Shown here: positions 4,602 through 20,117 of the stretch, piece after piece
How the letters are laid out: the number at the start of each line of letters is the position of its first letter
Numbering within the stretch: position 1 is the stretch's first letter
IMG/VR virus record: IMGVR_UViG_3300046513_000348
Span: 124,001 to 188,000 of that record
Length of the DNA stretch: 64,000 bases
Reading direction: 5' to 3' (one strand)
Translations under genes and position numbers: made by a program
Notes under the pieces: model-generated
What the model saw: the letters and a program-made list of their open reading frames with translations, nothing else
What the model was told of the DNA's origin: nothing
Database searches by the model: none

Positions 4602-6488
4602 ATGGCTGATCCCGTTGTGAGTTACCCGTTTGACCCCACGGGTCAGGCGAGTACCAACAGAATCGTGGGAGAACCGATTAGCGTCCTGCCTCCCGGCGAT
4701 CGTCTTTTTCATTATGCGATGCCCAAGTTCGCGCCGTTCTTCGAAGAAGGACTGGTCGTCAAGCTTCGCGACCTGAGTAACAATGTCATAACATTGACGA
4801 AGGGTGTCGACTTCTACCTCAGTCACAAGTTCATGGATGCGTCTCTCGCTACCATGCACCCGATCTGGGGCTCGATCTCGTTCCTTCGTCGCGACATCGC
4901 TGGTACCCTCATCGTCGACTACAACACGCTCGGCGGTATCTGGACCATCGATTCGGCTACGATCACGGAAATCCTGGTCAACACCATTCGTAATCCGCGC
5001 ATCACGTCGTGGGAACAAGTGGTGGAGCGTCCAGTCGACTTCCCGGTCATCGATCACGTCTGGAATCTGGACGACATGGTCGGCCAGAAAGAGATCCTGG
5101 AAGTCCTGCAAAACTTCTACACCGCATATCTCGTCAGCCTCGATCCGGCATCGGAAGGCGGTGGTGGCGGTATCATCACGGATCACATCAACAACAAGAA
5201 CAATCCGCACCAAGTCACGGCAGCTCAAGTCGGCGCGTACTCCACCATCCAGATGGATACGAAGCTGGGCGAGTATTTGCCGAAGACCGGTACGGCAGTA
5301 GATTCCACCAAGTTCGACGGCATCACCATGGCACAGCTCATGGACAACGTTGCCAATACCAAAGTCCAGAATGCAGTTCATGCCGACAACGTCGATCATG
5401 CTTCTACTGCTGGTACTGCGGACAATGCAAGTAAGCTGGAAAGCAAGTCGCTGGCTGAAATCATGCAAGACGTGGCAACTGCAACGGTGGCTAACGCTAC
5501 CAAGTTCGCAGGCAAGACCTACGCTGAAGCAACTGTTGATATCCTGGCGGGTAAGTCGGCTGACTCGGCTAAACTGGAAGGCAAAACGCTGAACGAGATC
5601 ATCGCACAGCTCCAGCAATCTTCCGGTGACGCTTCTACGCTTTCGGGTAAGACCCTGACGGCGATCATGAATGACGTCAAGACCACCGAAGTCAACCTGG
5701 CACTGCGTTCTGAAAATGCCGACAATTCGAGCCTGCTGGGTGGCAAATCGCTGGGTCAAATCCTCGATGCCGTGGCTGGTACCATTCCTGATCTGGCTCA
5801 CAATTCCGAACGTGTGTATGGCTATACGTTCGACCAGCTGATCGAGAACTTCCTGCAAAACCCTGCCTACGTTGCCAATCTGGATTATCGTATCGATCTG
5901 GTCACGCTGGAAACGGCACCGGTCATCCATACCAACGATGGCGGCAGTCAAGATGCCAACTACCGTTACGTTCGCATCGGCAGCTTCCCGATCCCGACTA
6001 CCCTGGCACTGAATGGTACCGAGGTATTCGATCCGGCGGCGAAGCAACTGTCGGTTTCCATGTCGCTGATGTTCTACTTCGAAGACCATGTTCATACCCT
6101 GCGCGCTCACGCTTCGGTCGTGACGGGTACTCGTACGTTCAACGTGGAGTACTTCTCGGATACGAACCTGGGAACCGATCTGTATCTGGGTATCGATAAC
6201 TCGGATAGCACCATGAAGTCCGAGGACGGCACCAAGACGGCGAAGAATGCAATTCTCTACGCCAAGATCAAGTCCACGGTAATGCCGCGTGCCTACGGTG
6301 CGTTCCTTCCCCTGCAAAACTACTTCGCGTTGGAAGATCCGGATGTGCCTCTGGTCTACGACAGCACCTGCAAAGTCATTAACCCAGTTACCTGGAAAGA
6401 TCCGGCTGGCGCGGCCAGTGGCGATCAAGTGGAGTTCGATCAGGCAGCTGATTCCCTGAACGCTCTCCTGGTAACTCCAGCGGCGTAA
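4602..6488 (+). CDS. Tail-fibre-like virion protein
   Basis: N-terminal YPFDPTG...NRI module typical of jumbo-phage fibre proteins, HINNKNNPHQVTAAQVGAY collar motif and internal shaft repeats. Confidence 0.7.
   Translation: MADPVVSYPFDPTGQASTNRIVGEPISVLPPGDRLFHYAMPKFAPFFEEGLVVKLRDLSNNVITLTKGVDFYLSHKFMDASLATMHPIWGSISFLRRDIAGTLIVDYNTLGGIWTIDSATITEILVNTIRNPRITSWEQVVERPVDFPVIDHVWNLDDMVGQKEILEVLQNFYTAYLVSLDPASEGGGGGIITDHINNKNNPHQVTAAQVGAYSTIQMDTKLGEYLPKTGTAVDSTKFDGITMAQLMDNVANTKVQNAVHADNVDHASTAGTADNASKLESKSLAEIMQDVATATVANATKFAGKTYAEATVDILAGKSADSAKLEGKTLNEIIAQLQQSSGDASTLSGKTLTAIMNDVKTTEVNLALRSENADNSSLLGGKSLGQILDAVAGTIPDLAHNSERVYGYTFDQLIENFLQNPAYVANLDYRIDLVTLETAPVIHTNDGGSQDANYRYVRIGSFPIPTTLALNGTEVFDPAAKQLSVSMSLMFYFEDHVHTLRAHASVVTGTRTFNVEYFSDTNLGTDLYLGIDNSDSTMKSEDGTKTAKNAILYAKIKSTVMPRAYGAFLPLQNYFALEDPDVPLVYDSTCKVINPVTWKDPAGAASGDQVEFDQAADSLNALLVTPAA
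5290..5790 (+). repeat. Intragenic peptide repeats A-x-(D/N)-(S/A)-x-K-(L/F)-x-G-K-(S/T)-L-x-x-I (about 6 copies)
   Basis: AVDSTKFDG, ADNASKLESKSL, ANATKFAGKTY, ADSAKLEGKTL, GDASTLSGKTL and ADNSSLLGGKSL in the 628-aa protein. Confidence 0.7.
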
Positions 6489-6497
6489 AGAGAAATC

Positions 6498-7520
6498 ATG
6501 GCTGATACCAATATCCTCCCACCTTCCCATTCGTTCGATGAGACCGGCGTCTTGCCGGAGAACTACATCGAAAACGAAATGCGTTTCCTTGCGGATCGTA
6601 CTTATCGTGCAGTGGCTCCTCGTTTCGGCGCTTTCTTCATTGAAGGCTTCCGCATTCGCGATGGCAACGGCAACGACATCCCGAAAAGCAAGTACCAGTA
6701 CGCACTGTACAACAACACCTTGTCGGCCAAGTGCGGCAAGGACGTGATTGGCGCTATCGTCATCACTGACCCGACCGTGGTATCGCCCATCTACATGGAC
6801 TATCACTGCGTCGGCGGCCCGTGGGGTGCTTCCAACGAGCGCATCATCGAGATGTTCTACGAGCTGATGAAGGATCGTCCGGTTGCCTGGCCGAACATCC
6901 TCGGTAAGCCGGATGCCTACAAGCCCGCTCACCACTTCCAGGATATCGGCGACCTGTACGGTGCTGAATACTTCGTGGAAGCCCTCGAGCGTCTGACCGA
7001 TGCCATCCTGATGGGTGACTCGGCATCGCACGATGAGATCTGGCGTCGTATGGACGAAATGCGTACTGAGCTCAAAGGCAATATCGACGATCTCAGTAAG
7101 GCACTGAACAAACGTATCGACGACACCGATGCAGCCCTGCGCCAACTCGTTGCCGATACTAAGGCCGACCTGACCCAACAGATCGCCAACCTTCGCAGTG
7201 ACATGAACGCTGCGGACAATGCGATCAACCAGCGTATTACCAATGTGCAAAACACGTTGCAAGGTAACATCGATGCAGTGGCGCGTTCCCTGTCGTCGCA
7301 CGTCAACGATTGGGGCAATCCACACCACACCAGCTACGGTCAAGTGGGTACCTACTCCACGACCGACATCGATGCCAAAGACAAGGCAATCAAGGACTCC
7401 CTCACGAACTATGTGAAGAAGGACACCAACGAGAATCTGTCGCTCAGTATCGCAGGCGGACAGCTCTTTGGTTACGTCAATGGCGTATGGCAGATCATCT
7501 GGCCGGCTCAGTGGTCCTAA
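6498..7520 (+). CDS. Tail-fibre-associated virion protein with coiled coil
   Basis: GAFF...YHCVGG module, central heptad coiled coil, HVNDWGNPHHTSYGQVGTY collar motif and a short C-terminal YVNGVWQIIWPAQWS. Confidence 0.65.
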   Translation: MADTNILPPSHSFDETGVLPENYIENEMRFLADRTYRAVAPRFGAFFIEGFRIRDGNGNDIPKSKYQYALYNNTLSAKCGKDVIGAIVITDPTVVSPIYMDYHCVGGPWGASNERIIEMFYELMKDRPVAWPNILGKPDAYKPAHHFQDIGDLYGAEYFVEALERLTDAILMGDSASHDEIWRRMDEMRTELKGNIDDLSKALNKRIDDTDAALRQLVADTKADLTQQIANLRSDMNAADNAINQRITNVQNTLQGNIDAVARSLSSHVNDWGNPHHTSYGQVGTYSTTDIDAKDKAIKDSLTNYVKKDTNENLSLSIAGGQLFGYVNGVWQIIWPAQWS

Positions 7521-7575: not shown

Positions 7576-8106
7576 ATGAAATCTCAGCAGGCAATCAACG
7601 TACTCGCAGCCCTCAACTCGTTTACGCCAGTGCCAGCGGATTTGATGCTCCTCGAGGTATTGTCTTCGCCATACCCTTATCAACAGGGTATGGTTAAAGC
7701 GATTCTCGAGGGCGGTAAACAGATCACCCTCGAGAGCGCTGAAGAAATGTGGCCGTATGTTCGTAACGGCTGCCTCAAGATTGAGGGCATGGAAAAACTG
7801 AGCCAGAAGCTCTGGGATTTCTGTAACCTCGTCCGCACGGAGCGTGGCCGTTACAAGCCCGTCTCGTGCCACATCTTCAATGCGACTCAAGGTGCTCCCA
7901 GTTTTCCGGATCATACCGATCCGGAAGATGTATACCTCTATGTCGTCGGCGGCGAGAAAACTCTCATCGTCGAGGGTAAAGAGGTCGTACTCAAGGCTGG
8001 CGATTCGCTCTGCATTCCTGCGGGTACGACTCATCGTGCCGTGAATCACAAAGCTTCCTGCATGCTCAGCATCGGCTTTGACAAGTTTATTCTGGAGAAG
8101 CTCTGA
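7576..8106 (+). CDS. JmjC/cupin-type Fe(II)/2OG oxygenase (Cupin_4/ROX-like core)
   Basis: FPDHTDPEDV (HxD), GGEKTL (K) and LKAGDSLCIPAGTTHRA (distal His). SD AGGAG upstream. Confidence 0.75.
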   Translation: MKSQQAINVLAALNSFTPVPADLMLLEVLSSPYPYQQGMVKAILEGGKQITLESAEEMWPYVRNGCLKIEGMEKLSQKLWDFCNLVRTERGRYKPVSCHIFNATQGAPSFPDHTDPEDVYLYVVGGEKTLIVEGKEVVLKAGDSLCIPAGTTHRAVNHKASCMLSIGFDKFILEKL

Positions 8107-9173
8107 TGCACAGAACAGTTTATATCAAGACGACGGAAGCCTGCCAGCTGAATTGCAAGCATTGTTTCACTGGCGGCAATGGTCCTGCTCGTACTTTCCT
8201 CGACATGGACAAGACCGAGCAATGGATCCGTCGTTTCAATAATGCGATTACGCCCCGTGACGAAGTTCACTTCGAACTGCATGGCGGCGAACCTTTCCTG
8301 GCTCCCGTTGACATGCTGAAGCGCTTAACCCGCGCTATCCGTGTCTGGGGTCCTGCATTGCACACGGTCGGCGCCACGACTAACCTCGTGTACAAAATGT
8401 CCGACGAGTTGTTCTGGTTCATCAAGAACGATCTCGACAGCATCGCAACCAGCTGGGACAAGGGTATCCGTTTCGAGAATCCTAAGCAGGAAGATCTGTG
8501 GCGGACGAACTTGAAACGTCTGATTGACGCTGGCATCAAAGTCGTTCTGAACGTCAGCGTGTCTCGCGCGGTTGTCGAGATGGATCAGGAGGAGCTCGTT
8601 AAGTTCCTTCGTGATACCGGTTGCTACAAAGTGCAGTTCGACCGCATCACCCAAAACGGCAATGCCAACAATCACCTGGACCTCTTCCCCAGCAACGCAG
8701 AAATCAACCAGTGGTATCTGCGCATGCATGCAGCAACTGAAAAGCTGAATGCTCGGGAATGGTTCTACAACTCGGCACTGGAAGATGTGTATGCCAAGTT
8801 CGAGAAAGGTAACTCCTGCTCGGGTACTTTTTGCCGTGACTGCGAAGAGACGATTCTCACGCTGAACGCAGACGGTACGATCGGCGGTTGTCCTAACTCG
8901 GCACCAGAAGAATATTTCGGCAACATCGATATGTTGATGCACCAGCTCCATACTGCCCCGAAGCGTATCGACCTGATGACGAAGGAGAAGGTCCGCAACG
9001 ACCACTGCTTCACCTGCCCGGTATTCAGTTACTGCGGCAGCGATTGTCACCGACTTGAATGGGAAGGCGACGTGTGTGCTTCTCCACGTCAGCTAATGCT
9101 CAAGCTTGCCGGTTTGCCGTACGAAGAAGTCAAAATCCCCAGTAAAAAGTTCATTCCTATTAAGGCCGTCTAA
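8106..9173 (+). CDS. Radical SAM/SPASM-domain protein (rSAM-1)
   Basis: YIKTTEACQLNCKHC (CxxxCxxC), HGGEPFL and SPASM Cys set CSGTFCRDC...GGCPN...CFTCPVFSYCGSDC...C. TGATG overlap with the cupin gene. Confidence 0.92.
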   Translation: MHRTVYIKTTEACQLNCKHCFTGGNGPARTFLDMDKTEQWIRRFNNAITPRDEVHFELHGGEPFLAPVDMLKRLTRAIRVWGPALHTVGATTNLVYKMSDELFWFIKNDLDSIATSWDKGIRFENPKQEDLWRTNLKRLIDAGIKVVLNVSVSRAVVEMDQEELVKFLRDTGCYKVQFDRITQNGNANNHLDLFPSNAEINQWYLRMHAATEKLNAREWFYNSALEDVYAKFEKGNSCSGTFCRDCEETILTLNADGTIGGCPNSAPEEYFGNIDMLMHQLHTAPKRIDLMTKEKVRNDHCFTCPVFSYCGSDCHRLEWEGDVCASPRQLMLKLAGLPYEEVKIPSKKFIPIKAV

Positions 9174-9175: not shown

Positions 9176-9709
9176 ATGGTTGCAATTTACAAAACCGACA
9201 TGGACCCGTCCGCTCAGGCTTACCTGACGAACGGTGTCAACAACATGGGCGTGTACACGAGTGGCAACGCTCCTCCCAATACGAACACTGGCCGCTTGAC
9301 CAGCTACAACCGCAATCCGCCGGAAAGCTACCCGTCGCGATATCTGAGCGGCGCCGTCAAAGCGCCTCGGCTGAAAGAGCTGATGATCGCTCTGGCTTCG
9401 AACTACTATATGCTGGGTCGTGGCAATTACGGCCTGCGTAATACCGATTCGACCACGAATCGAGAATGGTACACCGGTACCGGTAGCGGTATCTTCGCTC
9501 TGTCCGGCGTGAACAACGGTATCGCCGGTGCTGCAGCCGGTGCTCCACTTCCGGCAGTTCCAAGTCCGATCACCCATGCCCGTGCATCGGACATCTACGG
9601 CTACGGCTGGGCGCAACTGCAAAGCTGTATCAGTACCGTGAGCGTTGACCTGACCGTCTGCCACAGTTCTTGCCACACCTCGTGCCACGGCTCCCGTGGT
9701 CGTCGTTAA
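9176..9709 (+). CDS. Candidate substrate/precursor protein with C-terminal (CHxS)3-RGRR motif
   Basis: 177 aa, N/G/S/T-rich body, ends VCHSSCHTSCHGSRGRR. Starts 2 nt after the rSAM-1 stop. Confidence 0.7.
   Translation: MVAIYKTDMDPSAQAYLTNGVNNMGVYTSGNAPPNTNTGRLTSYNRNPPESYPSRYLSGAVKAPRLKELMIALASNYYMLGRGNYGLRNTDSTTNREWYTGTGSGIFALSGVNNGIAGAAAGAPLPAVPSPITHARASDIYGYGWAQLQSCISTVSVDLTVCHSSCHTSCHGSRGRR
9659..9694 (+). repeat. Three tandem 12-nt units TGCCAC-N6 encoding CHxS
   Basis: TGCCACAGTTCT TGCCACACCTCG TGCCACGGCTCC. Confidence 0.9.
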
Positions 9710-9730
9710 TAAACACTGAAGGAAACCTCC

Positions 9731-11344
9731 ATGAGCGATAACGAAAACTTTGCATCCAGTACCGAACTGTCGAACATCAGCGAGAAGATCGATTCGATCG
9801 ATTCCGGCACGAATACCTTCGACAGCAATATGCGGCCGGTCGAGCTTCCTGGTTTCCAGGCAGCATTCAATGCAGCAGTCGAGGCGGGTTCTCCGCACAG
9901 CCTGTGCCCGGAAGTCTTGGAACCGATCCCGCACGTCGACATCGACATCGCCGCTACCTATCCGCAGCCCGAGCAGGCAATGATCGAGCGGATCCGCGAA
10001 CCGAATCCCGGCTATGTTCCTACCGGCGAATCGCTGGAAGGCAAGTCGGCTGAAGAAGTCGTCGCTTCCTGGACCGTTCAGTCAGAAACCGATGGTGCCA
10101 TGGAAGTCGGCGAAGGCGTGAAAGAAGTTGCCCAGCGCATCCTCGATGAAACCGGCCTGTCGCCGTCGGAACTGATCGCCAATTCGAGCGTCGCGGACAA
10201 CAATCCGCCGGAAGTTCTTCGTGACGAAGAAGGCAAACCCATCAAAGTCACCATCAGTGTGACGGATCTTTCCGAAGTGATCCACATGCCGGTCCCGGCA
10301 GAAGACACGTCGGACATCAGTGACTTCGAACTGAAGGAAGAAGAAGCGGCGGCAGCATTGGCCATTCGCCAGCAGTTCACCGACAACCTGAATATCGAGC
10401 GCGGTATCGATCTGACTGAACCGCACGTCCTCGACGACGCTTTCGATCCGGAAAATCCCGAGCACATGAAAATGCTCGAAGAAGGCTTGGCCAGCGGCGC
10501 CATTGCCGATGCGAACAAGATCATGGAAAAGCCGGAAATGATCAGCCTGGAAAACGTCCGCGAAACCGTGGTGCCGATTCCGACGGATCTGATCCGCGAG
10601 TTCTTCACGAACAAGGGCCTGTACTACCTGATCGACTATCGCGAGTCCAAGCTCAAGGGCGGTGCTTTCCTGACTTACTTGACCAACCTGAATGTTCCGG
10701 CCGATCTGCGCTTCAGCGCGGTTCTCGAGTACGAAGAGTACGCCGAGCTCATGAAGGCTTACATGGATCAGCGTTCGGTGATCAATTGCCCTCTGCTGCA
10801 CGTCATGGCCGCGGAACTGCTGCTGTTCGCAAAGGGCCTGCCGCACGAGCGTTCGCCGTATGTAACACCGGTGCCGAAAGCTTCGTTCCTCATCCGCTTC
10901 ATCGACGAGAACAAAGAACAGATCGGCAAGTGGCTGCACTTCATCGACTCGACCCAGGTTTTCGCCCTGTCGGCCATCAAAGTCCTGAACGGCTATTATA
11001 AACCGAAGGAGTTCTTCGAGAACATCGATGACAAGGAATACGTCGGCAGCAACATCGCCCAGCTGTATCGCATCCCGGAATTCATCGCGTACTACTTCGC
11101 CCTTGAAGGCGCCGAGTACAAGCTGTCGTACTTCACGCAGCAGTACGAAGAGTACATGTTCAAGAACGAACGCCTGGCCAAGTACTTCCGTTCGCCCCAC
11201 AACTTCTCGGCCCTGATGTTCGAGCACATCGCCCAAGGTACGATCAAAGCCAGTGACATCGGTTACGGCCTGTTCGCCATCGGCGTGTTCGCTCCGGAAG
11301 CAGGTATCGCCGAGTTCGACGCATCGGCCAAAGCGCCGGCATAA
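9731..11344 (+). CDS. Hypothetical protein: acidic disordered N-half plus globular C-terminal domain
   Basis: 537-aa ORF with SD (AAGGA) and phage-typical codon bias. E/D/P-rich for the first ~250 aa. Confidence 0.8.
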   Translation: MSDNENFASSTELSNISEKIDSIDSGTNTFDSNMRPVELPGFQAAFNAAVEAGSPHSLCPEVLEPIPHVDIDIAATYPQPEQAMIERIREPNPGYVPTGESLEGKSAEEVVASWTVQSETDGAMEVGEGVKEVAQRILDETGLSPSELIANSSVADNNPPEVLRDEEGKPIKVTISVTDLSEVIHMPVPAEDTSDISDFELKEEEAAAALAIRQQFTDNLNIERGIDLTEPHVLDDAFDPENPEHMKMLEEGLASGAIADANKIMEKPEMISLENVRETVVPIPTDLIREFFTNKGLYYLIDYRESKLKGGAFLTYLTNLNVPADLRFSAVLEYEEYAELMKAYMDQRSVINCPLLHVMAAELLLFAKGLPHERSPYVTPVPKASFLIRFIDENKEQIGKWLHFIDSTQVFALSAIKVLNGYYKPKEFFENIDDKEYVGSNIAQLYRIPEFIAYYFALEGAEYKLSYFTQQYEEYMFKNERLAKYFRSPHNFSALMFEHIAQGTIKASDIGYGLFAIGVFAPEAGIAEFDASAKAPA

Positions 11345-11353: not shown

Positions 11354-12418
11354 ATGCTCAATTTGTTCGATCGTGTCTATATGCGGCACGATAACGTCTT
11401 GATCCGTGGTCAAGGCCAGCGCAAGCTGATCATCACGCCCAAGACGAAAGAAACCGCTTACGTCGAAGGAAAGACCTCGCAGATCGAAATCGGTCTGATC
11501 GGTGTCTACGAGAACCTGGCTGAATGCGAAGCGTTCTACGGCGATCGCGATACCATGTGGGCTGTTCTTCGTCAAACCAAGTCGAAGGTCATCATTATCG
11601 CCGACAAGTGGACGTTTGCGGAACTGATCATTCAGTACTGGAAGTCCATCTTCAAGTCGCCGACGGTGGAAAGTCTCTTCGCGTTGTACGAAGTGATGAT
11701 CAACAACGAAAATCTGCACACCATTCGTCCGATGGAAAAGCGCGTCAATCAGTACTCGGCCGATTCTCCGGATGAAGCCATCGTCAAGCTGACGCCTGCC
11801 GCTTTCAAGGAAGTGTTCGACAAGGTGGAAGGGTCGCCTGTCCTGGAAACCCTGGAGCTGAAAGAACTCCCGTTCGAGTACGCTTTGATGGCCTATCTGG
11901 TTGACGAAACGAACCCGACTGCACGGAAGGTCCTCTTTCCGAAGGTCGACAAGATCGTCAAGGACAACATCGTGGCGCAGCTCATTGGCAGTCGTGACGA
12001 GATGCTCTACGAGTCCCACAACTACTACCTGATCGACGGTAAGGAAAACGAAGTCCCGATCACCGATCCGATCGCGTACATGAAGAACCATCCAGCCCTG
12101 TCGTGGGTCCTGGACGATGTCTTCCAGTACGGGCAGGAAGAAGAGATCCTTGCCAAGTACGGCCTGGAAAAGATCAAGCTGTTCATTCGTGTGGTGGGTC
12201 GTATTCTGTTCGAAAACGATCTGATGTTGGTCGCCATCGACTTCATCCGGAACAAGCAGTACGCTGAACTGATCGCGCACGACATCGGCGATCATCGCGG
12301 CAACTACTTCGGCACCCATGCTTATCAGCGCAAGATCAACAGCCTGTTCGTGTCCTACATGTACCAGCTCAAGCGGCTGAACCTGGTGGACCAACTGGCC
12401 CAGTACCAACTGCGTTAA
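11354..12418 (+). CDS. Hypothetical protein in rSAM cluster
   Basis: 354-aa ORF, SD AAGGA, 9 nt after the previous stop. Confidence 0.8.
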   Translation: MLNLFDRVYMRHDNVLIRGQGQRKLIITPKTKETAYVEGKTSQIEIGLIGVYENLAECEAFYGDRDTMWAVLRQTKSKVIIIADKWTFAELIIQYWKSIFKSPTVESLFALYEVMINNENLHTIRPMEKRVNQYSADSPDEAIVKLTPAAFKEVFDKVEGSPVLETLELKELPFEYALMAYLVDETNPTARKVLFPKVDKIVKDNIVAQLIGSRDEMLYESHNYYLIDGKENEVPITDPIAYMKNHPALSWVLDDVFQYGQEEEILAKYGLEKIKLFIRVVGRILFENDLMLVAIDFIRNKQYAELIAHDIGDHRGNYFGTHAYQRKINSLFVSYMYQLKRLNLVDQLAQYQLR

Positions 12419-12525: not shown

Positions 12526-13620
12526 ATGAATCAGCCATTCAATTCTGACCTGTCTTCTGCTGCAACGATTGCAAATGCAACCGGCTACCATCTGAGCCTG
12601 AGTCTCGAATGGCTGTCGGGATGTCAGTTTAGCTGCAAGGGCTGCCATGTGAACAAGGAGAACGGGGTTCCTTATACTCCTACTCAAGTGAACCATCTGG
12701 CCCGTTGGCTGGAGGATATGAGGTTCAAGGGCGGTTATACGCCAACGATCGTGTTCTTAGCTCCGACAGATTTCCTGGTTGCTGACAACATCGTGAAAAT
12801 CTTAACGAACATTCACGCATATGGGATTCTGGCTCAGTTCAAGCGACTGTCGCTCCAGACGACGTTCCTCAACATGGATCAGGCCGAGACCATCGCCAAG
12901 ATTCTTAAGCTGCGTTATTCGCACATGGAGCTGGAACTGAACTTCATCATCGAGCCAGAGCAGGTGGAGAATGAGAAGTATCTGGACCGAATCAAGGAGA
13001 ACCGCGCCAAGATGCTGGAACTCCTGGACTGGAAGAAACACGTAGCGTCATTCGCAATCATGAACGTCTACGAGTACGACCGGGTTAAGAAGAACAACGT
13101 CAAAAAGATCCTGGCCGATTATCAGGCACTCCACCAGCGTATCAAAGAGAAGTTCGATTCCACAATCGACTTCAATTTCTCCATGACCCGTAACTCCTGG
13201 TGGTCGGGCGAAGACATCAAGGAAGCGGTCCAAAGTGTCAGCCGTATCTTCGATGCTGGCGTAAGCCACGAGATCAACCAGACCATTCGATTCTCCTTCG
13301 GCAAGCTGGAAGACTCGGCTATCGAAAAACACTACAACTGGCATCAGGGAAATCTTTACGTATCGCCCATGATCTATGAGCGGATTGCTTCCTTCGATGA
13401 CCGACTGAAGGTGCCTTACGGCGGTGTGAAAGCAACCGAGGACTTCGAGCTGAAGCTCATGATCGATCAGTATCATTGGTCCGAGAAAGACGTGCCGTGC
13501 AAGGGCTGTAACTATCAGGCTTCCTGCGTGGATCGAAACGTCCTGACCTTCATGAAAATGAACGACATCAAAGAGTGCATCATCGCAAAGAAAGCACTCG
13601 ACGCCATTAACGTAATCTAA
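12526..13620 (+). CDS. Degenerate radical SAM-like protein (rSAM-2)
   Basis: LSGCQFSCKGCH (CxxxCxxC), but APTDF occupies the expected GGE position. Short C-terminal CKGCNYQASC. Confidence 0.75.
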   Translation: MNQPFNSDLSSAATIANATGYHLSLSLEWLSGCQFSCKGCHVNKENGVPYTPTQVNHLARWLEDMRFKGGYTPTIVFLAPTDFLVADNIVKILTNIHAYGILAQFKRLSLQTTFLNMDQAETIAKILKLRYSHMELELNFIIEPEQVENEKYLDRIKENRAKMLELLDWKKHVASFAIMNVYEYDRVKKNNVKKILADYQALHQRIKEKFDSTIDFNFSMTRNSWWSGEDIKEAVQSVSRIFDAGVSHEINQTIRFSFGKLEDSAIEKHYNWHQGNLYVSPMIYERIASFDDRLKVPYGGVKATEDFELKLMIDQYHWSEKDVPCKGCNYQASCVDRNVLTFMKMNDIKECIIAKKALDAINVI

Positions 13621-13632: not shown

Positions 13633-14664
13633 ATGAACCAAGAAGGCTTCCTGCAAAACGTCCTGGCAAGCAAGCTGCCTGAATCCTCAGAGATCGAACA
13701 TCATCTGTTCGAGTTCTGCAACCTGAACTGCTCCTTCTGCGGTCAGGATCACAAATCCACCGTGGGCATGGATTCGATCATCGATAAGGCATATCAGACC
13801 GTCGACTTCATCATGCGTTCGCCGTTAAAAATGCACACCATCAACGTGATGGGCGGCGAGATCTTCAACGACGGCATTGGCGTCGATGTCTTCCTCCAGT
13901 ACTTCGAGTTCTACGAGATCATCCGTAAAGCTTGTGCGGACCTGAAGGTTGACTTCCAGATCAACTGGGTGACGAACCTGGTGTTCAAGGAGAACCGCGA
14001 GATGGTCGATCTCCTGATGGAGAAGACTTCGATGCATTCCCGCATCTCGACGTCTTACGACTTCGCTGGTCGTGGGTTGAACCTGAACAAGAAGATGTTG
14101 TTCGAGTACAACCTGCTGTATTACAAGAAGTACATCGGTGTGGTTGGTTTCGTTCTGACCGCTCCTGCCATCCGTAAGCTGATCGCTAACAAGGATCGCT
14201 TCTTCCGCGACATTCTCTACGGCAACTATCCGTTGTACTTCGACTGGTATGTGCCGGAGAAGACTGCTGAGAAGATGATGCCGTCTGAGCAGGAGACACT
14301 CGATGGACTCCTCTTCATCGCCGACAACTATCCGGAAGTCGAACCAGTCAAGAGCCTCTTGCAGAACAAAGAAAACAAGATGACTTGCTACTCGCTGAAC
14401 AAGACCACCATCTTGCCAGACGGGAAGGAAGTCAAGTGCCGTTACATGGAATACGACAAGTCGGATTTCCAGAACGACATCGACTACAGTTCGAACGCCA
14501 ACATCATCACGGCGCATATCGAACGTCACGACTGCATGTCCTGTGAATGGTACGAGAAGTGCCAGTTCCGCTGCTTCGTAAACGCAGACTGGGGCAAACT
14601 CGAACGCCTCCCGGAATGCCTGTTCAAAACCTTTTTCGAAAAGACGAAACATCTCCATGGATAA
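13633..14664 (+). CDS. Radical SAM protein with SPASM-like tail (rSAM-3)
   Basis: FEFCNLNCSFC, MGGEIF and C-terminal CMSCEWYEKCQFRC (CX2CX5CX3C). Confidence 0.88.
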   Translation: MNQEGFLQNVLASKLPESSEIEHHLFEFCNLNCSFCGQDHKSTVGMDSIIDKAYQTVDFIMRSPLKMHTINVMGGEIFNDGIGVDVFLQYFEFYEIIRKACADLKVDFQINWVTNLVFKENREMVDLLMEKTSMHSRISTSYDFAGRGLNLNKKMLFEYNLLYYKKYIGVVGFVLTAPAIRKLIANKDRFFRDILYGNYPLYFDWYVPEKTAEKMMPSEQETLDGLLFIADNYPEVEPVKSLLQNKENKMTCYSLNKTTILPDGKEVKCRYMEYDKSDFQNDIDYSSNANIITAHIERHDCMSCEWYEKCQFRCFVNADWGKLERLPECLFKTFFEKTKHLHG

Positions 14665-15022
14665 GAATCAAATGCTGTCTTTCCTGGCCTACCTGGTTTT
14701 GTATTTCCTTTACAAAGCCATCGTGGGCTTTATCAAAGGCATCTGGAAGTCGGCGAATTGGACGAGATATATTCCTCGGTCCGGCCGGAAGCTCTTCAGT
14801 CGAGCACTTCCGATCCTGCTGCTGTTCGTGGTGGTCAATGTGGTCTTTCATCTGGCCGCCAATCCGAAAGACATGTTCGCTTACTATTCGATGGTTTGCT
14901 TCATGCTCTCTTTCGCCTGGCTTTGGACGATCGATGAATACGATCTCTCGATCAAAGACATCTTCAGCATGGTGACCTTCGGCATCGGCTGCATTCTCCT
15001 CCATCTTCATCCTCTGTTCTAA
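14657..15022 (+). CDS. Small multi-pass membrane protein
   Basis: 121 aa with about four hydrophobic segments. Overlaps the rSAM-3 stop. Confidence 0.7.
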   Translation: MDKNQMLSFLAYLVLYFLYKAIVGFIKGIWKSANWTRYIPRSGRKLFSRALPILLLFVVVNVVFHLAANPKDMFAYYSMVCFMLSFAWLWTIDEYDLSIKDIFSMVTFGIGCILLHLHPLF

Positions 15023-15521: not shown

Positions 15522-15658
15522 AAAATTGCGATCCGAACGTGTTGTTCGTTCTGGTGCCGTGGGCCTTCATCATTTTGGTCGTAGGCCTTTACGGTTGCTT
15601 CATTTTCCATGCAAGGAAAGAAAGAAAACGCTATGAGCGCTCCTGCTTTAATCATTAA
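15518..15658 (+). CDS. 46-aa single-TM peptide (not in ORF track)
   Basis: ATGA overlap with the DHFR stop. MKNCDPNVLFVLVPWAFIILVVGLYGCFIFHARKERKRYERSCFNH: a TM segment followed by a basic tail. Confidence 0.5.
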   Translation: MKNCDPNVLFVLVPWAFIILVVGLYGCFIFHARKERKRYERSCFNH

Positions 15659-16718
15659 GCCAACAGAAGCGTGTAACTTCAAGTGCACCTTCTGTTCGAG
15701 CACCGACATCCAGGGCGATTCCCCGAACCTGGATCTCGAGTACATCCGACAATACCTGCAGGCTTTCCCCAGCTGCCCGACGATCATCATTAATGGCGGC
15801 GATCCGCTCATGATGAAGCCGGAGTACTACTGGAAGATCATCCACATGCTGGACGAGATGGGTCTCGCAACCACCCTGTCGTTCACCACCAATCTCTGGG
15901 CTTTCTACAAGAAGCCGGAAATGTGGGAGAACCTGTTCCTGAGTCCGCGTGTAGGTGTCGCTACTTCGTTCCAGTACGGCAATGCTCGCCTCAAGGGCGA
16001 CCTGACCCCGTACACGGAAGAAGAGTTCTGGGCTGTTTCCGATCTGTTCTTGAAGCGCATCGGCTATCGTCCCGAGTTCATCGCCGTCATCACCAAGGAA
16101 AACGAAGACACGGTTATCAAGACCGTGGAACTGGCCAAGAAGATGGGCGTGGTCTGCAAAGTAAACTACGCCATGGCTTCTGGTCCAACGACAGAGTTCA
16201 AGGGCATCAAGATCGGTAATGCCGACAGCACCTACGTGTTGGCCGACATCTATCAGAAGTACATCGAGATCTACGAAGCGGGCCTGGCCGAGTGGGAACA
16301 CAACACCAAGGTCATGATGACGCGGCTGATCGGCGGCTTCTCGATCTGCCCGCAAGCACGTAACTGTGACCAGCATATCCGTGCCTTGCAACCCGGCGGC
16401 AAGTACTACAGCTGCGGTGCATTTGGTGACGACGGCCTGTATCCAATTGACTTCCAAACCGAAGTGATTAAGAACAAAGGGAAGTTCGTCGAGATGCCTC
16501 TCCAATGGCAACCGGAACTGCAAAGCCTGAAGACGGCCTGTTTCGAATGTCCGATGTTCGAAATCTGCAACGGCTGCCGTAAGACGACTCATGACCTGAA
16601 GCGTCTGGGCCTGGTGGAAACCCATTGCGCCAAGATGAAAACCCTGGCTCCAAAGATCATCGATATCAACGGCCTGACCGGTAAGGTCGAACCCACTCCG
16701 TATGTGAAGGAGAACTAA
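15633..16718 (+). CDS. Radical SAM/SPASM-domain protein (rSAM-4)
   Basis: IIKPTEACNFKCTFC, INGGDPL, ICPQARNC...YYSCG...CFECPMFEICNGC...HC. Start refined to MSAPAL. Confidence 0.92.
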   Translation: MSAPALIIKPTEACNFKCTFCSSTDIQGDSPNLDLEYIRQYLQAFPSCPTIIINGGDPLMMKPEYYWKIIHMLDEMGLATTLSFTTNLWAFYKKPEMWENLFLSPRVGVATSFQYGNARLKGDLTPYTEEEFWAVSDLFLKRIGYRPEFIAVITKENEDTVIKTVELAKKMGVVCKVNYAMASGPTTEFKGIKIGNADSTYVLADIYQKYIEIYEAGLAEWEHNTKVMMTRLIGGFSICPQARNCDQHIRALQPGGKYYSCGAFGDDGLYPIDFQTEVIKNKGKFVEMPLQWQPELQSLKTACFECPMFEICNGCRKTTHDLKRLGLVETHCAKMKTLAPKIIDINGLTGKVEPTPYVKEN

Positions 16719-18022: not shown

Positions 18023-18958
18023 ATGAAAGATAGCAAAGTCATCAACCTGTCGGTTAACCCGACTTACTTCTGTAATTTCCGTTGTGGCTTTTGCTATCTG
18101 ACGGAGGAACAACTTTCCGATCAGAAACGACTGGGCTTGGACGTCCTGAAACAACGCATCGAAGAAATCCGCGAGGCCGGTTACGAGATCGGCCATGTGG
18201 ACCTGTACGGCGGCGAGGTGCTCTTGCTGCCTTACGAATATCTGTTGGCTGCCAAGGTACTCATGCGAGTCGAAGGTGCGCAGGACATCGAGATCATCAC
18301 CAACCTGTCGACTTATCGTCAAGAGATCCTCGATGACCAACGCTTCGGTATCTCGGTAAGCTACGACTTCGAGCATCGACAGCAGGCCGATCATGTTTGG
18401 AAGAACATGATGAAGATGACCCGTCCCTTCACGGTTCTGACTCTGGGTATTCCGGAACTCCTGAAGAAGGATCCCATCGAATGCATCGAACAGCTGAACC
18501 TGCTGTCGAACTGCCATCACTGGGAGATCAAACCTTACAGCACGAATCAGGCGAACCAACTGCCTTTCAAGTATTCGGACTACGAAGCCTTCATCCAGAA
18601 GGTGATCGATTACCCGAATAAGAACTTCGAGTTCCTCAACGAGGTGGCTCTGAAGATGGCCCACTACGGTGACGCCAATCCTTATTCGGACGACCACGTC
18701 TACATTACGCCGAGTGGCAAATTCGGTGTTCTGGAATTCGACAAGAACGACAACGAGTATTTCCTGGAGCTCGACTCCTTCGGCAACTACCTGGACTGGA
18801 CCTTGCTTGAGAAATCGCGCGTTCTGTCCAATGCATTCTGCGGCTCCTGCAACTACAACGGTCGCTGTATCTCGGAGCACCTGCGTGAGGTCAAGTCCCT
18901 CGACGACAGCTGTAACGGGTTCCACAATCTGATACAGTGGTACGAGAAGAAACTATGA
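18023..18958 (+). CDS. Radical SAM protein with short Cys-rich tail (rSAM-5)
   Basis: SVNPTYFCNFRCGFCY, LYGGEV, ITPSG and CGSCNYNGRCISEH...SCNG. Confidence 0.9.
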   Translation: MKDSKVINLSVNPTYFCNFRCGFCYLTEEQLSDQKRLGLDVLKQRIEEIREAGYEIGHVDLYGGEVLLLPYEYLLAAKVLMRVEGAQDIEIITNLSTYRQEILDDQRFGISVSYDFEHRQQADHVWKNMMKMTRPFTVLTLGIPELLKKDPIECIEQLNLLSNCHHWEIKPYSTNQANQLPFKYSDYEAFIQKVIDYPNKNFEFLNEVALKMAHYGDANPYSDDHVYITPSGKFGVLEFDKNDNEYFLELDSFGNYLDWTLLEKSRVLSNAFCGSCNYNGRCISEHLREVKSLDDSCNGFHNLIQWYEKKL

Positions 18959-19521
18959 CTCAACTTTCTGTTGACGAACCCTGGCATACGCCAGTCGGTA
19001 AATGGAACTACGCCCAGCGAATCGGCCATCTTCAGCTGCTGGATGAGGTAATGCAGAATCCCGACATCATGAAGGATGTGAAGGTCGGGTCTCTGCGTAT
19101 CTCGGATCGCCGGGAACAGTTCCCCAACTTTTACAACTTCATCGATACCGAACTGACCGCAGCATTCAGGCAGTATCTGTTCGACTGTTACAAACACACT
19201 CCGACGGAAGTAACATGGTCAGCATGGGTTCATGTCTGCCTGCATGGCCAAGGTCTTGTGCCTCATTACCACATGGGCGATGAGCATCTGACCTCGATTG
19301 TCTATCTGACGGAGTCGAAAGCGAATTTGGTTCTTCGGGATCCTCGCGCCAACATGGTTCGCAATTGGCCCCAAGAAATCCTGAAGGATCATTACAAAGA
19401 TTACGAAATTCATCCAAGAGTCGGTGACTTCGTTATGTTCCCAACCTTTATCGACCATTACGTAATGGCGACTGAACCGGACTTCCGTGTATCGGTTGCC
19501 ATTGACTGGTGTTTTAAATGA
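18955..19521 (+). CDS. Putative 2OG-Fe(II) oxygenase (TIGR02466-like)
   Basis: PHYH...LTSIVYL...LVLRDPR...GDFVMFPTFIDHYV...RVSVA. ATGA overlap sets the start at MTQ. Confidence 0.8.
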   Translation: MTQLSVDEPWHTPVGKWNYAQRIGHLQLLDEVMQNPDIMKDVKVGSLRISDRREQFPNFYNFIDTELTAAFRQYLFDCYKHTPTEVTWSAWVHVCLHGQGLVPHYHMGDEHLTSIVYLTESKANLVLRDPRANMVRNWPQEILKDHYKDYEIHPRVGDFVMFPTFIDHYVMATEPDFRVSVAIDWCFK

Positions 19522-20117
19522 CAACTCTTAACTCAAGCGCATTCCTCGCTGACTTCCTTACCAAAGGTTTCCACTGCTTCAATGCGGCGGACTTTTTACA
19601 ACTGTGCCCGATCGAGAAGTTCCAGACCGTCACCGTCAAGCACGCCGACAACTGCTTTCATGCGGAAGGCCATGAATTTCATAACGAGATCATGACGTCG
19701 GCAATCAAGGGCCTGATGTCGATCCTGACTGGCAGTGTCTTGTACGAGTTCGATGCTTCGCTGGCATTCGACTTCTTCGCCGATAAGCCGAACGATCATG
19801 TCGTGAAGTTCCACAGCGATGCACAGTACGCGATGCCTGGACAGAATGCCACGATTAATTGCTTCTTCGACGACACTGATGAGACCACGGGCGGCCGTTT
19901 CGATATGTCGCCTTACCGTGAAGACATCTTCGGCAAGAGCGACGATGTTCCTGGAATGGCCTCGGTCTATCCGAAGATGTACGACATCATCATCTTCAAT
20001 CAGAATCGGAATTTCCTGCATAAGGTGACATCGGCAAATTCGCGGCGCCGGATGATCTCCTTCGCCTGCACTTTCCATGACATCAACCCACTTCATCCGA
20101 ACTGGGTGCCAGCATGA
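19518..20117 (+). CDS. 2OG-Fe(II) oxygenase-like protein (paralog B)
   Basis: FHSD...INCFF...GG...FNQNRNFLHKV...RRRMISF. ATGA overlap. Confidence 0.75.
   Translation: MTTLNSSAFLADFLTKGFHCFNAADFLQLCPIEKFQTVTVKHADNCFHAEGHEFHNEIMTSAIKGLMSILTGSVLYEFDASLAFDFFADKPNDHVVKFHSDAQYAMPGQNATINCFFDDTDETTGGRFDMSPYREDIFGKSDDVPGMASVYPKMYDIIIFNQNRNFLHKVTSANSRRRMISFACTFHDINPLHPNWVPA

What the first reader, a model, noticed from the sequence alone, without database searches (positions are those of the whole stretch)
9176..9709. Candidate substrate with C-terminal CHSS-CHTS-CHGS-RGRR core
Seen: three exact-period 12-nt repeats (TGCCAC-N6) encode CHxS x3, then a basic RGRR end. The preceding ~160 aa are N/G/S/T/Y-rich like a virion fibre or decoration protein, not a short leader peptide. 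Known: HxS triads are the repeat unit of HxsA precursors, aromatic-X-X motifs (including His) are crosslinked into cyclophanes by SPASM enzymes, and spaced Cys residues are thioether donors in ranthipeptides. Inference: this may be a protein-sized 'precursor' whose tail receives His-Ser cyclophane and/or Cys thioether crosslinks, or forms a metal-binding knot on the virion.
Basis: partly seen in the sequence, partly recalled or inferred. Interest (0 to 1): 0.85.

Follow-up and report, generated by a model that had tools for sequence, protein, structure and literature searches.

The report
Phage virion protein with rSAM-linked CHxS tail
A 177-residue jumbo-phage protein ends in an almost invariant 16-residue Cys-His-x-Ser x3 + RGRR tail that is shared by hundreds of otherwise dissimilar phage (and Bdellovibrio-like) proteins, always sits beside a battery of radical-SAM and oxygenase genes, and in one relative is a virion component, so it is very probably an undescribed enzyme-modified tail on a phage particle protein.

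Summary
ORF 9176-9709 (+) encodes 177 aa ending ...DLTV-CHSS-CHTS-CHGS-RGRR*, in three exact 12-nt periods (0 chance matches in 100 shuffles). The window is a jumbo phage related to Ralstonia phages RSL2/RSF1.

The tail is not a local oddity. A profile search found 410 protein clusters. Their bodies diverge below 25% identity, yet the tail stays hCHxSCHxSCHxSRGRR-COOH, and synonymous codons vary freely.

In 80 loci picked only by homology to the downstream gene, 79/79 upstream genes end in this tail, and 72/75 have a radical-SAM gene immediately upstream.

The conserved cassette is cupin, rSAM/SPASM, TAIL, two unknown proteins, 3-4 more rSAMs and 2OG oxygenases. It lies next to fibre/baseplate genes and also occurs in Bdellovibrionota MAG contigs.

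AlphaFold gives a compact alpha/beta body (pLDDT 89.5), not a fibre, with a low-confidence C-terminal tail.

Published proteomics of Agrobacterium phage Atu_ph07 found the homologue gp170 (31.9 kDa) in virions, most abundant in gel fragment 1. The neighbouring enzymes were not listed.

Best reading (0.6): a virion protein whose C-terminal tail is modified or crosslinked by the co-encoded rSAM/SPASM enzymes. The chemistry is untested. No Pfam or NCBIfam family matched and no paper quoting the motif was found.

The parts
9176..9709 (+). TAIL protein: 177 aa, phrog_35144. It has a compact alpha/beta body (residues 1-~161) plus a C-terminal tail.
   Evidence: ORF. phrog_35144 E 2.4e-24. No Pfam, NCBIfam or PADLOC hit. 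AF2 pLDDT 89.5, pTM 0.82. 410 related clusters.
9659..9706 (+). Tail motif C162-R177: CHSS-CHTS-CHGS-RGRR, the last 16 residues. Stop codons TAA TAA follow at 9707-9712.
   Evidence: Invariant in all homologues aligned. Present in 79/79 loci chosen without reference to the motif. Low model confidence: mean pLDDT 65 for residues 161-170 and 50 for 171-177.
8106..9173 (+). Radical-SAM/SPASM enzyme R1 (355 aa). Its stop lies 2 nt before the TAIL start codon. Proposed primary maturase.
   Evidence: CX3CX2C at residue 13 and CX2CX5CX3C at residue 301. SPASM domain TIGR04085 scores 29.8 against a cut-off of 27. Weak hits to DynA, anSME and PapB. phrog_1802.
7576..8106 (+). Cupin / JmjC-like protein (176 aa), the first gene of the conserved cupin-rSAM-TAIL triplet.
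   Evidence: PF07883 E 9.4e-14 and PF08007 JmjC_2 E 6.6e-9. Conserved position in most loci.
9731..11344 (+). 537-aa protein. Its C-terminal 268 aa form the phrog_20767 domain ('P20767'), the conserved gene directly after TAIL. Function unknown.
   Evidence: phrog_20767 E 1.3e-97. AF2 pLDDT 89, pTM 0.86. No PDB fold or sequence match. Directly downstream of TAIL in 79/79 loci.
11354..12418 (+). 354-aa protein, phrog_36207 ('P36207'). Conserved cassette member of unknown function.
   Evidence: phrog_36207 E 4.4e-137. No Pfam or PDB match. Synteny.
12526..13620 (+). rSAM-like protein (364 aa, phrog_31457) with CX3CX2C and a reduced C-terminal Cys set.
13633..14664 (+). rSAM/SPASM enzyme R3 (343 aa).
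   Evidence: phrog_1802. CX3CX2C plus CX2CX5CX3C.
15609..16718 (+). rSAM/SPASM enzyme R4 (369 aa).
   Evidence: PF04055 E 4.5e-13. CX3CX2C plus CX2CX5CX2C.
18023..18958 (+). Fifth rSAM enzyme (311 aa).
   Evidence: PF04055 E 6.6e-11. CX3CX2C at residue 17.
18937..20689 (+). Three consecutive 2OG-Fe(II) oxygenase-like genes: 18937-19521, 19518-20117 and 20114-20689.
   Evidence: PF13759 and PF13640 hits. The equivalent genes are annotated as 2OG-Fe(II) oxygenases in RSF1 and SURPRISE13.
4602..7520 (+). Two fibre-like virion structural genes (628 aa and 340 aa) directly upstream of the cassette. These are context, not part of the cassette.
   Evidence: phrog_2163 'virion structural protein', phrog_13857 and tail-fibre phrogs. 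The RSL2 and SURPRISE13 orthologues are annotated as virion structural protein.

Best explanation
The ORF encodes a structural, virion-associated protein. A compact alpha/beta body carries a flexible C-terminal tail, CHxS-CHxS-CHxS-RGRR. That tail is the substrate ('core') of the co-encoded radical-SAM/SPASM enzymes. The first to act is probably R1, the gene that ends 2 nt before the TAIL start codon. The further conserved rSAM paralogues, the cupin and the 2OG oxygenases probably add more steps. The body stays attached, so this is RiPP-type maturation applied to a whole protein.

The most likely product is a set of radical-installed crosslinks. One option is Cys(i)-to-residue(i+3) thioether rings. 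Another is a His-x-Ser modification of the kind recently mapped in HxsA. Either would turn the tail into a rigid, oxidation- and protease-resistant knot. That knot would then link the protein covalently into a high-mass virion assembly or present a metal- or polyanion-binding tip.

Shown: the gene, the motif, its amino-acid-level conservation, the synteny, SPASM signatures in the enzymes, the fold prediction, and the presence of a homologue in virions.

Inferred: that the tail is modified at all, which enzyme acts on it, the chemistry, and the role of the product.
For: (1) Tail conservation against a diverging body.
- All 9 homologues from the word-index search carry the tail, and so do the phage relatives checked: RSL2, RSF1, SURPRISE13, Atu_ph07, Phosso and DT01. 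tblastn found full-length matches in 11 phage records.
- A profile search of 1.84 billion representatives gave 410 clusters at E<=1e-3.
- 98 of the 157 proteins then held end in CHxSCHxSCHxxRxRR. Nearly all the rest are close variants.

(2) Unbiased test. Loci were chosen only by homology to the downstream gene P20767. In 79/79 the upstream gene ends in CHxxCHxxCHxxRxRR. In 72/75 an rSAM gene is immediately upstream.

(3) Selection acts on the amino acids. Among 140 distinct tail DNA sequences, the Cys and His positions use both their codons. The Ser and Arg positions use both of their codon families, TCN/AGY and CGN/AGR.

(4) Conserved cassette. The order cupin, rSAM, TAIL, P20767, P36207, rSAM, oxygenases, rSAM, oxygenases, rSAM holds across about 100 IMG/VR loci and 27 GTDB contigs.

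(5) Enzyme type. R1 has CX3CX2C and the SPASM motif, and it passes the TIGR04085 cut-off. Its nearest named relatives are all peptide or protein maturases: DynA, anSME, PapB and DarE.

(6) Structure. AF2 gives a confident body. The first Cys-His closes the last beta-strand, and the rest of the tail has pLDDT 65 falling to 50. This is read as an exposed, accessible tail.

(7) Virion evidence from Atu_ph07 (PMC6102473, Table S5).
- gp170 (31.89 kDa; the mass was recomputed and matches) was found with 8 unique peptides and 35% coverage.
- It appeared in gel fragments 1-9 and was most abundant in fragment 1.
- Other ~30-kDa proteins peak in fragment 8, and 118-137-kDa proteins peak in fragment 2.
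- The adjacent rSAMs, the cupin and P20767 are absent from the list.

(8) Precedent. rSAM enzymes HxsB/HxsC mature the folded protein HxsA, placing a +8 Da change on an S-H-R-S-S motif (PMC13128918).
Against: - No mass-spectrometric or biochemical evidence of any modification exists for any family member.
- Gene adjacency does not prove an enzyme-substrate relation. The five rSAMs could act on other virion proteins, on nucleotides or on a small molecule.
- The high gel position of gp170 comes from a PEG-purified preparation. The loading buffer as described has no reductant, so disulfide bonding or aggregation could explain it. Many proteins smeared over many fragments in that study.
- An invariant tail on a variable body is also the pattern expected of a docking tag.
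- Relatives with a single Cys (CHxS-YVAPP-HSSRGRR) show that three Cys rings are not obligatory.
- The two most conserved partners, P20767 and P36207, have no recognisable fold or family, so half of the core cassette is mechanistically blank.
Confidence: 0.6

Rival explanations
1. The tail is an unmodified metal-binding or disulfide-forming motif on a virion protein. Three Cys and three His at i, i+4 spacing could coordinate Zn, Fe or Cu, possibly across subunits of an oligomer. The neighbouring rSAM and oxygenase genes would then act on something else, such as other structural proteins, nucleotides or a cofactor.
For: - Cys/His periodicity of 4 would put like residues on one face of a helix (sequence).
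- Phage fibres commonly carry axial metal sites (general knowledge).
- gp170 is in virions, and its high gel position was seen in a buffer with no reductant listed, which fits intermolecular disulfides.
- The cassette lies next to large structural genes that could be the real substrates.
Against: - Ser (or Asn, Asp, Ala) at the fourth position and the terminal RGRR are as conserved as Cys and His, which metal binding does not explain.
- Close relatives retain only one Cys yet keep CHxS...HSSRGRR and the cupin-rSAM-TAIL gene order.
- TAIL is tightly linked to the cupin-rSAM pair and to P20767 (79/79 and 72/75). That is hard to explain if they are functionally unrelated.
Confidence: 0.2
2. The invariant tail is a docking tag (a 'follower' peptide) that recruits the rSAM enzymes or P20767/P36207. 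The chemistry would then happen on the variable body or on a partner protein rather than in the tail itself.
For: - In many RiPP families the recognition sequence is the conserved part and the modified core varies (general knowledge).
- Here the tail is invariant and the body diverges.
- The helix-strand element just before the tail is also recognisably conserved.
Against: - The conserved positions are exactly the chemically reactive ones (Cys, His, Ser/Asn), in a strict period. The 'x' positions vary freely.
- The bodies share no other conserved reactive residues. The only invariant columns outside the tail are M1, P33, G86, L159 and V161.
- Invariant cores are also known, for example the mycofactocin and PQQ precursors and SCIFF (general knowledge).
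Confidence: 0.08
3. TAIL is a sacrificial scaffold. The tail is processed by the cassette and then cleaved off as a small peptide-derived cofactor, metallophore or toxin, as with the PQQ or mycofactocin precursors. P20767 or P36207 would serve as the unrecognised peptidase.
For: - The cassette is a multi-enzyme set (5 rSAMs, oxygenases, and in Bdellovibrionota also B12-rSAMs) of a size typical of cofactor or natural-product pathways.
- The cassette also occurs on Bdellovibrionota MAG contigs as long as 1.29 Mb with no phage gene recognised in the 8-kb stretches read.
Against: - No protease, transporter or immunity gene is recognisable in the phage cassettes.
- The body is a conserved folded domain of 110-310 aa, and the homologue is a virion protein with 35% peptide coverage.
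- The cassette is embedded in structural gene clusters.
Confidence: 0.07

Closest known systems
HXS anti-phage system (HxsA effector matured by rSAM enzymes HxsB/HxsC with HxsD; Nat Commun 2026, PMC13128918)
   Same: A folded protein, not a short peptide, carries His-x-Ser repeats rich in basic residues. Co-encoded radical-SAM enzymes mature it. The only mapped change (+8 Da) sits on an S-H-R-S-S motif in which His and Ser are essential. The TAIL end (C/P)-H-x-S-R-G-R-R has the same H-x-S-plus-Arg character.
   Different: - HxsA repeats have period 3, contain no Cys and are not C-terminal.
- HxsA has a peptidoglycan-binding domain, is N-terminally processed and is exported to the periplasm as a bacterial defence effector.
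- The window's rSAMs score 21.5 and 16.9 bits for HxsB (cut-off 370) and 31.9 and 14.0 bits for HxsC (cut-off 267.9). No HxsD equivalent was identified.
- TAIL is phage-encoded and its homologue is virion-associated.
Ranthipeptides / SCIFF and sactipeptides (PapB, CteB and related rSAM/SPASM thioether synthases)
   Same: C-terminal Cys-rich cores with regularly spaced Cys. SPASM-domain rSAM maturases are encoded next to the substrate. R1's weak best hits include PapB (E 1.7e-10) and other Cys-peptide maturases such as CefB and CcpM.
   Different: - Those precursors are about 40-60 aa with an N-terminal leader that is usually removed.
- There is one maturase per cluster.
- R1's PapB score is 40.7 bits against a cut-off of 340.
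- Here the 'leader' is a 110-310-aa folded domain, there are about five rSAM paralogues plus oxygenases, and the product apparently stays in a virus particle.
QhpC/QhpD (gamma subunit of quinohemoprotein amine dehydrogenase crosslinked by an rSAM/SPASM enzyme)
   Same: It is a precedent for an rSAM/SPASM enzyme installing several intra-chain Cys thioether crosslinks in a protein that remains a structural subunit of a larger assembly (recalled knowledge, not tested here).
   Different: It is a bacterial periplasmic enzyme subunit with Cys-to-Asp/Glu links and a quinone cofactor. There is no sequence or gene-context relation to the phage cassette.
Triceptides / three-residue cyclophane-forming rSAM enzymes (YhhB, AmcB and related)
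   Same: These rSAM/SPASM enzymes act on repeated aromatic-x-x motifs. H-x-S fits the aromatic-x-x format formally. R1 has weak hits to YhhB (E 1.9e-7) and AmcB (E 8.8e-7).
   Different: The scores are 30.3 against a cut-off of 445 and 28.2 against 425. The precursors are short peptides. The invariant Cys before each His has no counterpart.

Membership tests
phrog_35144 (phage protein family of unknown function) | Full-length match to the PHROG profile | tested here: met
   E 2.4e-24, residues 3-177 against profile positions 2-186 of 186. The distant relative in L004 matches only through its C-terminal 46 residues.
Radical-SAM/SPASM maturases (for the adjacent enzyme R1) | CX3CX2C cluster motif plus a C-terminal SPASM domain with CX2CX5CX3C | tested here: met
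   CQLNCKHC at residue 13 and CFTCPVFSYCGSDC at residue 301. TIGR04085 SPASM domain scores 29.8 bits against a cut-off of 27. PF04055 scores 28.2, just under the 29.5 cut-off.
HXS system (HxsA/HxsB/HxsC/HxsD) | rSAM enzymes reaching the HxsB (TIGR03978) and HxsC (TIGR03977) equivalog cut-offs | tested here: not met
   HxsB: 21.5 and 16.9 bits against 370. HxsC: 31.9 and 14.0 bits against 267.9.
HXS system (HxsA/HxsB/HxsC/HxsD) | Substrate with contiguous period-3 His-Xaa-Ser repeats and a peptidoglycan-binding domain | tested here: not met
   TAIL has period-4 C-H-x-S repeats at the extreme C-terminus. It has no Pfam or NCBIfam domain. The AF2 body has no PDB match.
Ranthipeptide / SCIFF | PapB/CteB-type maturase above the family cut-off, plus a short (~45 aa) precursor with a Cys-rich C-terminus | tested here: not met
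   PapB NF047865 scores 40.7 bits against 340. The substrate is 177 aa with a folded body. Only the Cys-rich C-terminus resembles the family.
Triceptide (3-residue cyclophane) systems | YhhB/AmcB-type maturase above cut-off, plus aromatic-x-x repeats in a short precursor | tested here: not met
   YhhB scores 30.3 against 445 and AmcB 28.2 against 425.
RiPP-like post-translational maturation (general class) | Ribosomal substrate encoded beside its modifying enzymes, with a conserved core | tested here: met
   The R1 stop lies 2 nt before the TAIL ATG. An rSAM is immediately upstream in 72/75 unbiased loci. The tail is invariant.
RiPP-like post-translational maturation (general class) | A demonstrated covalent modification of the core | not testable with these tools
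   This needs mass spectrometry of the C-terminal peptide. No published data were found.
Virion structural protein | Detected in purified particles | tested here: inconclusive
   The homologue Atu_ph07 gp170 was detected with 8 peptides and 35% coverage (PMC6102473 Table S5). No proteomic data for the window's phage or its closest isolates (RSL2, RSF1 and related) could be read; the RSL2/RSF1 paper is not held.

The most novel reading that the evidence does not exclude
A multi-enzyme radical-SAM/oxygenase pathway exists whose dedicated substrate is a virus-particle protein. The CHxS x3-RGRR tail would be converted into a covalently crosslinked knot (thioether and/or His-Ser links). That knot would tether the protein irreversibly into the tail, fibre or baseplate apparatus, or form its metal- or polyanion-binding tip. 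The same device would be used by predatory Bdellovibrionota. It would then be a shared, chemically hardened tool for attacking Gram-negative envelopes, and possibly the phage-side counterpart of the HxS-repeat chemistry that bacteria use in the HXS defence.
Probability: 0.3. Interest if true: 0.9.

Novelty: new variant of a known kind. Interest (0 to 1): 0.8.

Why it matters
Radical-SAM peptide chemistry is known almost entirely from small secreted natural products and a few cofactors and enzymes. Here a 10-13-gene cassette with about five rSAM enzymes is conserved around one virion protein. It occurs in soil jumbo phages, abundant marine and freshwater myovirus-like contigs and Bdellovibrionota MAG contigs.

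If the tail is modified, three things would follow:
- It would be the first enzyme-crosslinked structural protein of a phage particle made by rSAM chemistry.
- It would give a function to the unexplained 'radical SAM / 2OG oxygenase / cupin' genes annotated in many jumbo-phage genomes.
- It would offer a compact 16-residue tag with its enzymes for protein engineering.

The family is directly testable, because cultured phages that carry it already exist: RSL2, RSF1, FLC6/8, SURPRISE13, Atu_ph07, Phosso and pPa_SNUABM_DT01.

Tried and rejected
- Pfam, NCBIfam and PADLOC on TAIL gave no hit.
- Pfam on 32 members each of P20767 and P36207 gave nothing meaningful.
- Profile searches of the PDB with P20767 and P36207, and single-sequence searches with R1, gave nothing useful. 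The cupin hits only generic cupins.
- Foldseek of the two high-confidence models against the PDB gave no match with E<=0.001. BFVD returned only uncharacterised proteins, the best being family members.
- tblastn of the 257-aa and 127-aa marine TAIL classes against isolated phages found no match.
- jackhmmer and hhalign of tail-trimmed bodies gave mixed results. The window subgroup was not linked to the main cluster in the small local set (hhalign E 0.03). Homology of the bodies was later supported by full-length profile matches and by a TM-score of 0.75 to a member with 20% identity.
- Literature searches for the motif string and for phage + SPASM + virion terms found nothing relevant.
It was redone with a closer subset.
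- I tried to recover full cassettes of the single-Cys variants, to ask whether they have fewer rSAMs. The contigs were too short, and pattern scans of IMG/VR and JGI metagenomes found none.
- About ten of the first pattern hits, including the two giant-virus MAGs, are chance CHGC/CHGR low-complexity repeats and were discarded.
- The DHFR gene inside the cassette was rejected as a cassette member. It is present only in the RSL2-like group: 4 of 102 tail loci in the first phmmer pass, and in the window and the RSL2, RSF1 and SURPRISE13 loci in the gene maps.
- The RSL2/RSF1 virion proteomics paper is not in the library.
Full report
**1. The observation**

ORF 9176..9709 on the + strand encodes 177 residues ending ...SVDLTV-CHSS-CHTS-CHGS-RGRR. 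Two stop codons follow.

The tail lies at 9659-9706 as three 12-nt units, each beginning TGCCAC. TRF reports period 12. A degenerate pattern for CHxSCHxSCHxS matches once in the window, against zero matches in 100 dinucleotide-preserving shuffles. No other reading frame carries such a motif.

The gene upstream (8106..9173) ends 2 nt before the ATG. It is a radical-SAM enzyme with CX3CX2C and a full SPASM CX2CX5CX3C motif. It passes the TIGR04085 SPASM cut-off, 29.8 against 27.

**2. What the window is**

The region is related to Ralstonia phages RSL2 and RSF1 (genus Chiangmaivirus) and to the related Burkholderia phages FLC6, FLC8 and SURPRISE13. These are phiKZ-related jumbo phages of about 225 kb. 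DNA identity is 75-80% in patches.

The TAIL protein matches phrog_35144. It has full-length tblastn matches of 32-37% identity in 11 phage records.

In the RSL2, SURPRISE13 and RSF1 orthologues aligned, the last 19 residues are identical apart from one Thr/Ser exchange.

**3. The family is large and the tail is its constant**

- The word-index protein search found nine relatives. All end in CHSSCH[TSI]SCHGSRGRR, including two (P0008, P0009) with about 27% overall identity.
- A DNA pattern scan of IMG/VR for CHxSCHxSCHGS returned 111 stretches. About 100 are ORFs of 125-326 aa that terminate in [VILY]CHxSCHxSCHGSR[GSA]RR*. The rest are chance CHGC or CHGR low-complexity repeats.
- HMMER against 1.84 billion cluster representatives gave 410 clusters at E<=1e-3, many matching over the whole profile.
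- The variants are informative.
  - The fourth residue of a repeat is Ser but can be Asn, Asp or Ala.
  - Several close relatives of the window protein keep only the first CHxS and the last HSSRGRR. Examples are LTVCHNS-YVAPP-HSSRGRR, CHNSASSGGGHSSRGRR and CHSSKPPCHSSRGRR.
  - The constant elements are therefore hydrophobic-C-H-x-S ... H-x-S-R-G-R-R-COOH.
- Because pattern searches impose the motif, I made an unbiased set of 80 loci chosen only by homology to the downstream gene P20767. In 79 of the 79 with upstream sequence, the preceding gene ends in CHxxCHxxCHxxRxRR.
- Across 140 distinct tail DNA sequences, every conserved residue uses its synonymous codons freely. Ser uses both TCN and AGY, and Arg uses both CGN and AGR. 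Selection therefore acts on the peptide, not on a DNA repeat.

**4. Gene neighbourhood**

Gene maps of about 100 viral loci show one arrangement with minor permutations:

- large structural genes (1,000-3,700 aa in marine contigs; fibre-like 628- and 340-aa genes in the window)
- cupin
- rSAM/SPASM (R1)
- TAIL, sometimes as a tandem pair
- P20767
- P36207
- rSAM
- ~200-aa oxygenases
- rSAM
- oxygenases
- rSAM

In the unbiased set an rSAM is immediately upstream of TAIL in 72 of 75 loci. In the other three, one 308-aa gene is intercalated.

In the window the cassette runs from 7576 to about 20689. It holds five rSAM genes, three of them with SPASM motifs, plus a cupin with a JmjC-like segment and three 2OG-Fe(II) oxygenase-like genes.

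Other cultured phages carry the same cassette:
- Agrobacterium phage Atu_ph07: gp170, ending ...FCHSSCHASCHNSRSRR
- Sinorhizobium phage Phosso: ending ...YCHTSCHASCHSSRSRR
- Pseudomonas phage pPa_SNUABM_DT01: ending ...ICHTSCHTSCHSARGRR

A scan of one genome per GTDB species found 27 contigs, 26 of which have a TAIL ORF. About sixteen are assigned to Bdellovibrionota MAGs. They include contigs of 1.29 Mb, 382 kb and 299 kb, with the same partners and sometimes extra B12-binding rSAMs. Some other hits look like phage contigs binned into MAGs.

**5. Structure**

- AlphaFold2 with a 42-sequence alignment gives pLDDT 89.5 and pTM 0.82 for TAIL.
- The secondary structure is helices 6-22 and 63-75, a long beta-hairpin 80-109, helix 134-152 and strands 156-164.
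- The first Cys-His closes the last strand. The remaining tail is low-confidence, with mean pLDDT 65 for residues 161-170 and 50 for 171-177.
- The body is a compact domain, not a fibre, and the low confidence of the tail suggests it is exposed.
- Foldseek finds no PDB analogue. Among predicted viral structures the strongest matches are uncharacterised family members. One has TM 0.75 at 20% identity, and Atu_ph07 gp170 is among the weaker hits. This supports a common fold for the divergent bodies.
- P20767 also folds confidently (pLDDT 89, pTM 0.86) with no PDB match.
- P20767 and P36207 have no Pfam family and no sequence relative in the PDB.

**6. Experimental evidence from the literature**

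The Atu_ph07 paper (PMC6102473) analysed PEG-purified virions by SDS-PAGE and ESI-MS/MS.

- Table S5 lists gp170 at 31.89 kDa, with 8 unique peptides and 35.16% coverage. It was found in gel fragments 1-9 and was most abundant in fragment 1.
- I recomputed the masses of gp170, gp176 and gp177 from the RefSeq record. They match the table exactly, so the gene numbering is the same.
- In that table the 118-137-kDa proteins peak in fragment 2, the ~30-kDa proteins peak in fragment 8, and the 9-15-kDa proteins peak in fragment 13. I take fragment 1 to be the top of the lane. gp170 then runs far above its monomer size.
- The loading buffer as described contains no reductant. Disulfide-linked or otherwise covalent high-mass species are therefore both possible.
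- The cupin (gp172), the rSAMs (gp171, gp168, gp165) and P20767 (gp169) are not in the virion list.
- No paper held in the library quotes the motif or discusses this cassette beyond listing 'radical SAM' annotations.

**7. Mechanism**

The simplest account of all this is that TAIL is a particle protein whose C-terminal tail is the dedicated substrate of the cassette.

The arguments are:
- the strict, amino-acid-level conservation of chemically reactive residues in a fixed period
- the tail's low-confidence, probably exposed, position on a folded carrier
- the tight pairing of R1 and TAIL, whose stop and start codons lie 2 nt apart
- the SPASM type of the enzymes
- the persistence of about five distinct rSAM orthologue groups across very distant phages

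What chemistry occurs is inference.

- Cys(i) to residue(i+3) thioether rings would explain why position 4 tolerates Ser, Asn, Asp or Ala, since it would be an H-atom donor position.
- The invariant H-x-S-R end recalls the S-H-R-S-S site of HxsA. There, rSAM-dependent maturation adds +8 Da, and both His and Ser are essential (PMC13128918).
- The JmjC-like cupin and the 2OG oxygenases could hydroxylate His, Arg, Asn or Ser.
- The product may crosslink TAIL into a larger virion assembly, which would fit the gel behaviour. It may instead form a metal- or polyanion-binding tip.

**8. Rivals**

- An unmodified metal or disulfide motif, with the enzymes acting elsewhere (0.2). This is weakened by the single-Cys variants and by the conservation of Ser and RGRR.
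- The tail as a docking tag for enzymes that modify something else (0.08).
- A sacrificial scaffold for a cleaved cofactor or peptide (0.07). This is weakened by the homologue's presence in virions and by the lack of any recognisable protease or transporter.
- Chance is excluded.

**9. Relation to known systems**

- The system works like RiPP or protein maturation by rSAM/SPASM enzymes. The nearest characterised analogue is the HXS defence system.
- Membership in HXS, ranthipeptide/SCIFF or triceptide families fails on the defining HMM cut-offs and on substrate architecture.
- I classify it as a new variant of a known kind. It is a large, unnamed family. The substrate is a phage particle protein, and the enzyme set is unusually large.

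**10. Limits**

- No direct evidence of modification exists for any family member.
- Virion evidence comes from one distant homologue in a PEG preparation.
- The Bdellovibrionota loci are only 8 kb long and come from MAGs, so whether they are prophage or chromosomal is open.
- The question of whether the number of rSAM genes tracks the number of CHxS units could not be answered. The contigs were too short and two pattern scans found nothing.

Noticed in passing
window 15030-15521: A dihydrofolate reductase gene sits inside the rSAM cassette. Homologues appear only in the RSL2-like loci (4 of 102 tail loci in the first phmmer pass), which have one or two copies. It is probably an unrelated insertion.
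   Followed up: partly
window 14657-15022: A 121-aa strongly hydrophobic ORF (predicted membrane protein) lies between rSAM R3 and DHFR, overlapping the end of R3. It was not examined.
   Followed up: no
window 9731-10537: The gene after TAIL has an acidic N-terminal extension of about 270 aa in front of the conserved phrog_20767 domain. Most relatives (about 220-300 aa) lack it.
   Followed up: no
window 21168-22214: A Kelch-repeat (beta-propeller) protein is encoded just downstream of the oxygenase genes.
   Followed up: no
L033, L034, L042, L050, L078, L079, L085, L086, L110, L112, L120, L138, L149: In one group of contigs from the IMG/VR and GTDB scans, two small TAIL paralogues (about 124-145 aa; one is cut at a contig end in L078) sit in tandem directly after a giant 1,000-3,700-aa gene. 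In the longer loci they are followed by up to five tandem copies of the phrog_31457-type rSAM.
   Followed up: partly
L125:4286-6124 and L143:2152-3876: Bdellovibrionota versions of the cassette contain additional B12-binding-domain radical-SAM enzymes of 575-613 aa, which the phage cassettes lack.
   Followed up: partly
L139:3907-4266 (Dysosmobacter segnis BX15, 4.3-kb contig): A cultured gut Firmicute assembly carries the cassette with an expanded tail, CHSSCHSNVV-CHTSCHDSCHSNVV-CHASCHDSCHSARGRR. That is eight CH units in three blocks.
   Followed up: no
P0135 (232 aa): A variant whose CHSNCHSN units are separated from a final CHSSGRSRR by a poly-proline linker of about 35 residues.
   Followed up: no
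L135 (contig CAVRCF010000001.1, 1.29 Mb, Halobacteriovoraceae MAG): The cassette lies on a megabase-sized MAG contig assigned to Halobacteriovoraceae, so it is not confined to virus genomes. Whether it sits in a prophage could not be checked, because only 8 kb is held.
   Followed up: partly
Atu_ph07 locus L122:2974-5446 (gp177, gp176): The two genes a few positions upstream of the cupin (gp176, 66 kDa, and gp177, 21.7 kDa) are also virion proteins in the published proteome. gp177 was found in fragments 1-11 despite its small size.
   Followed up: no
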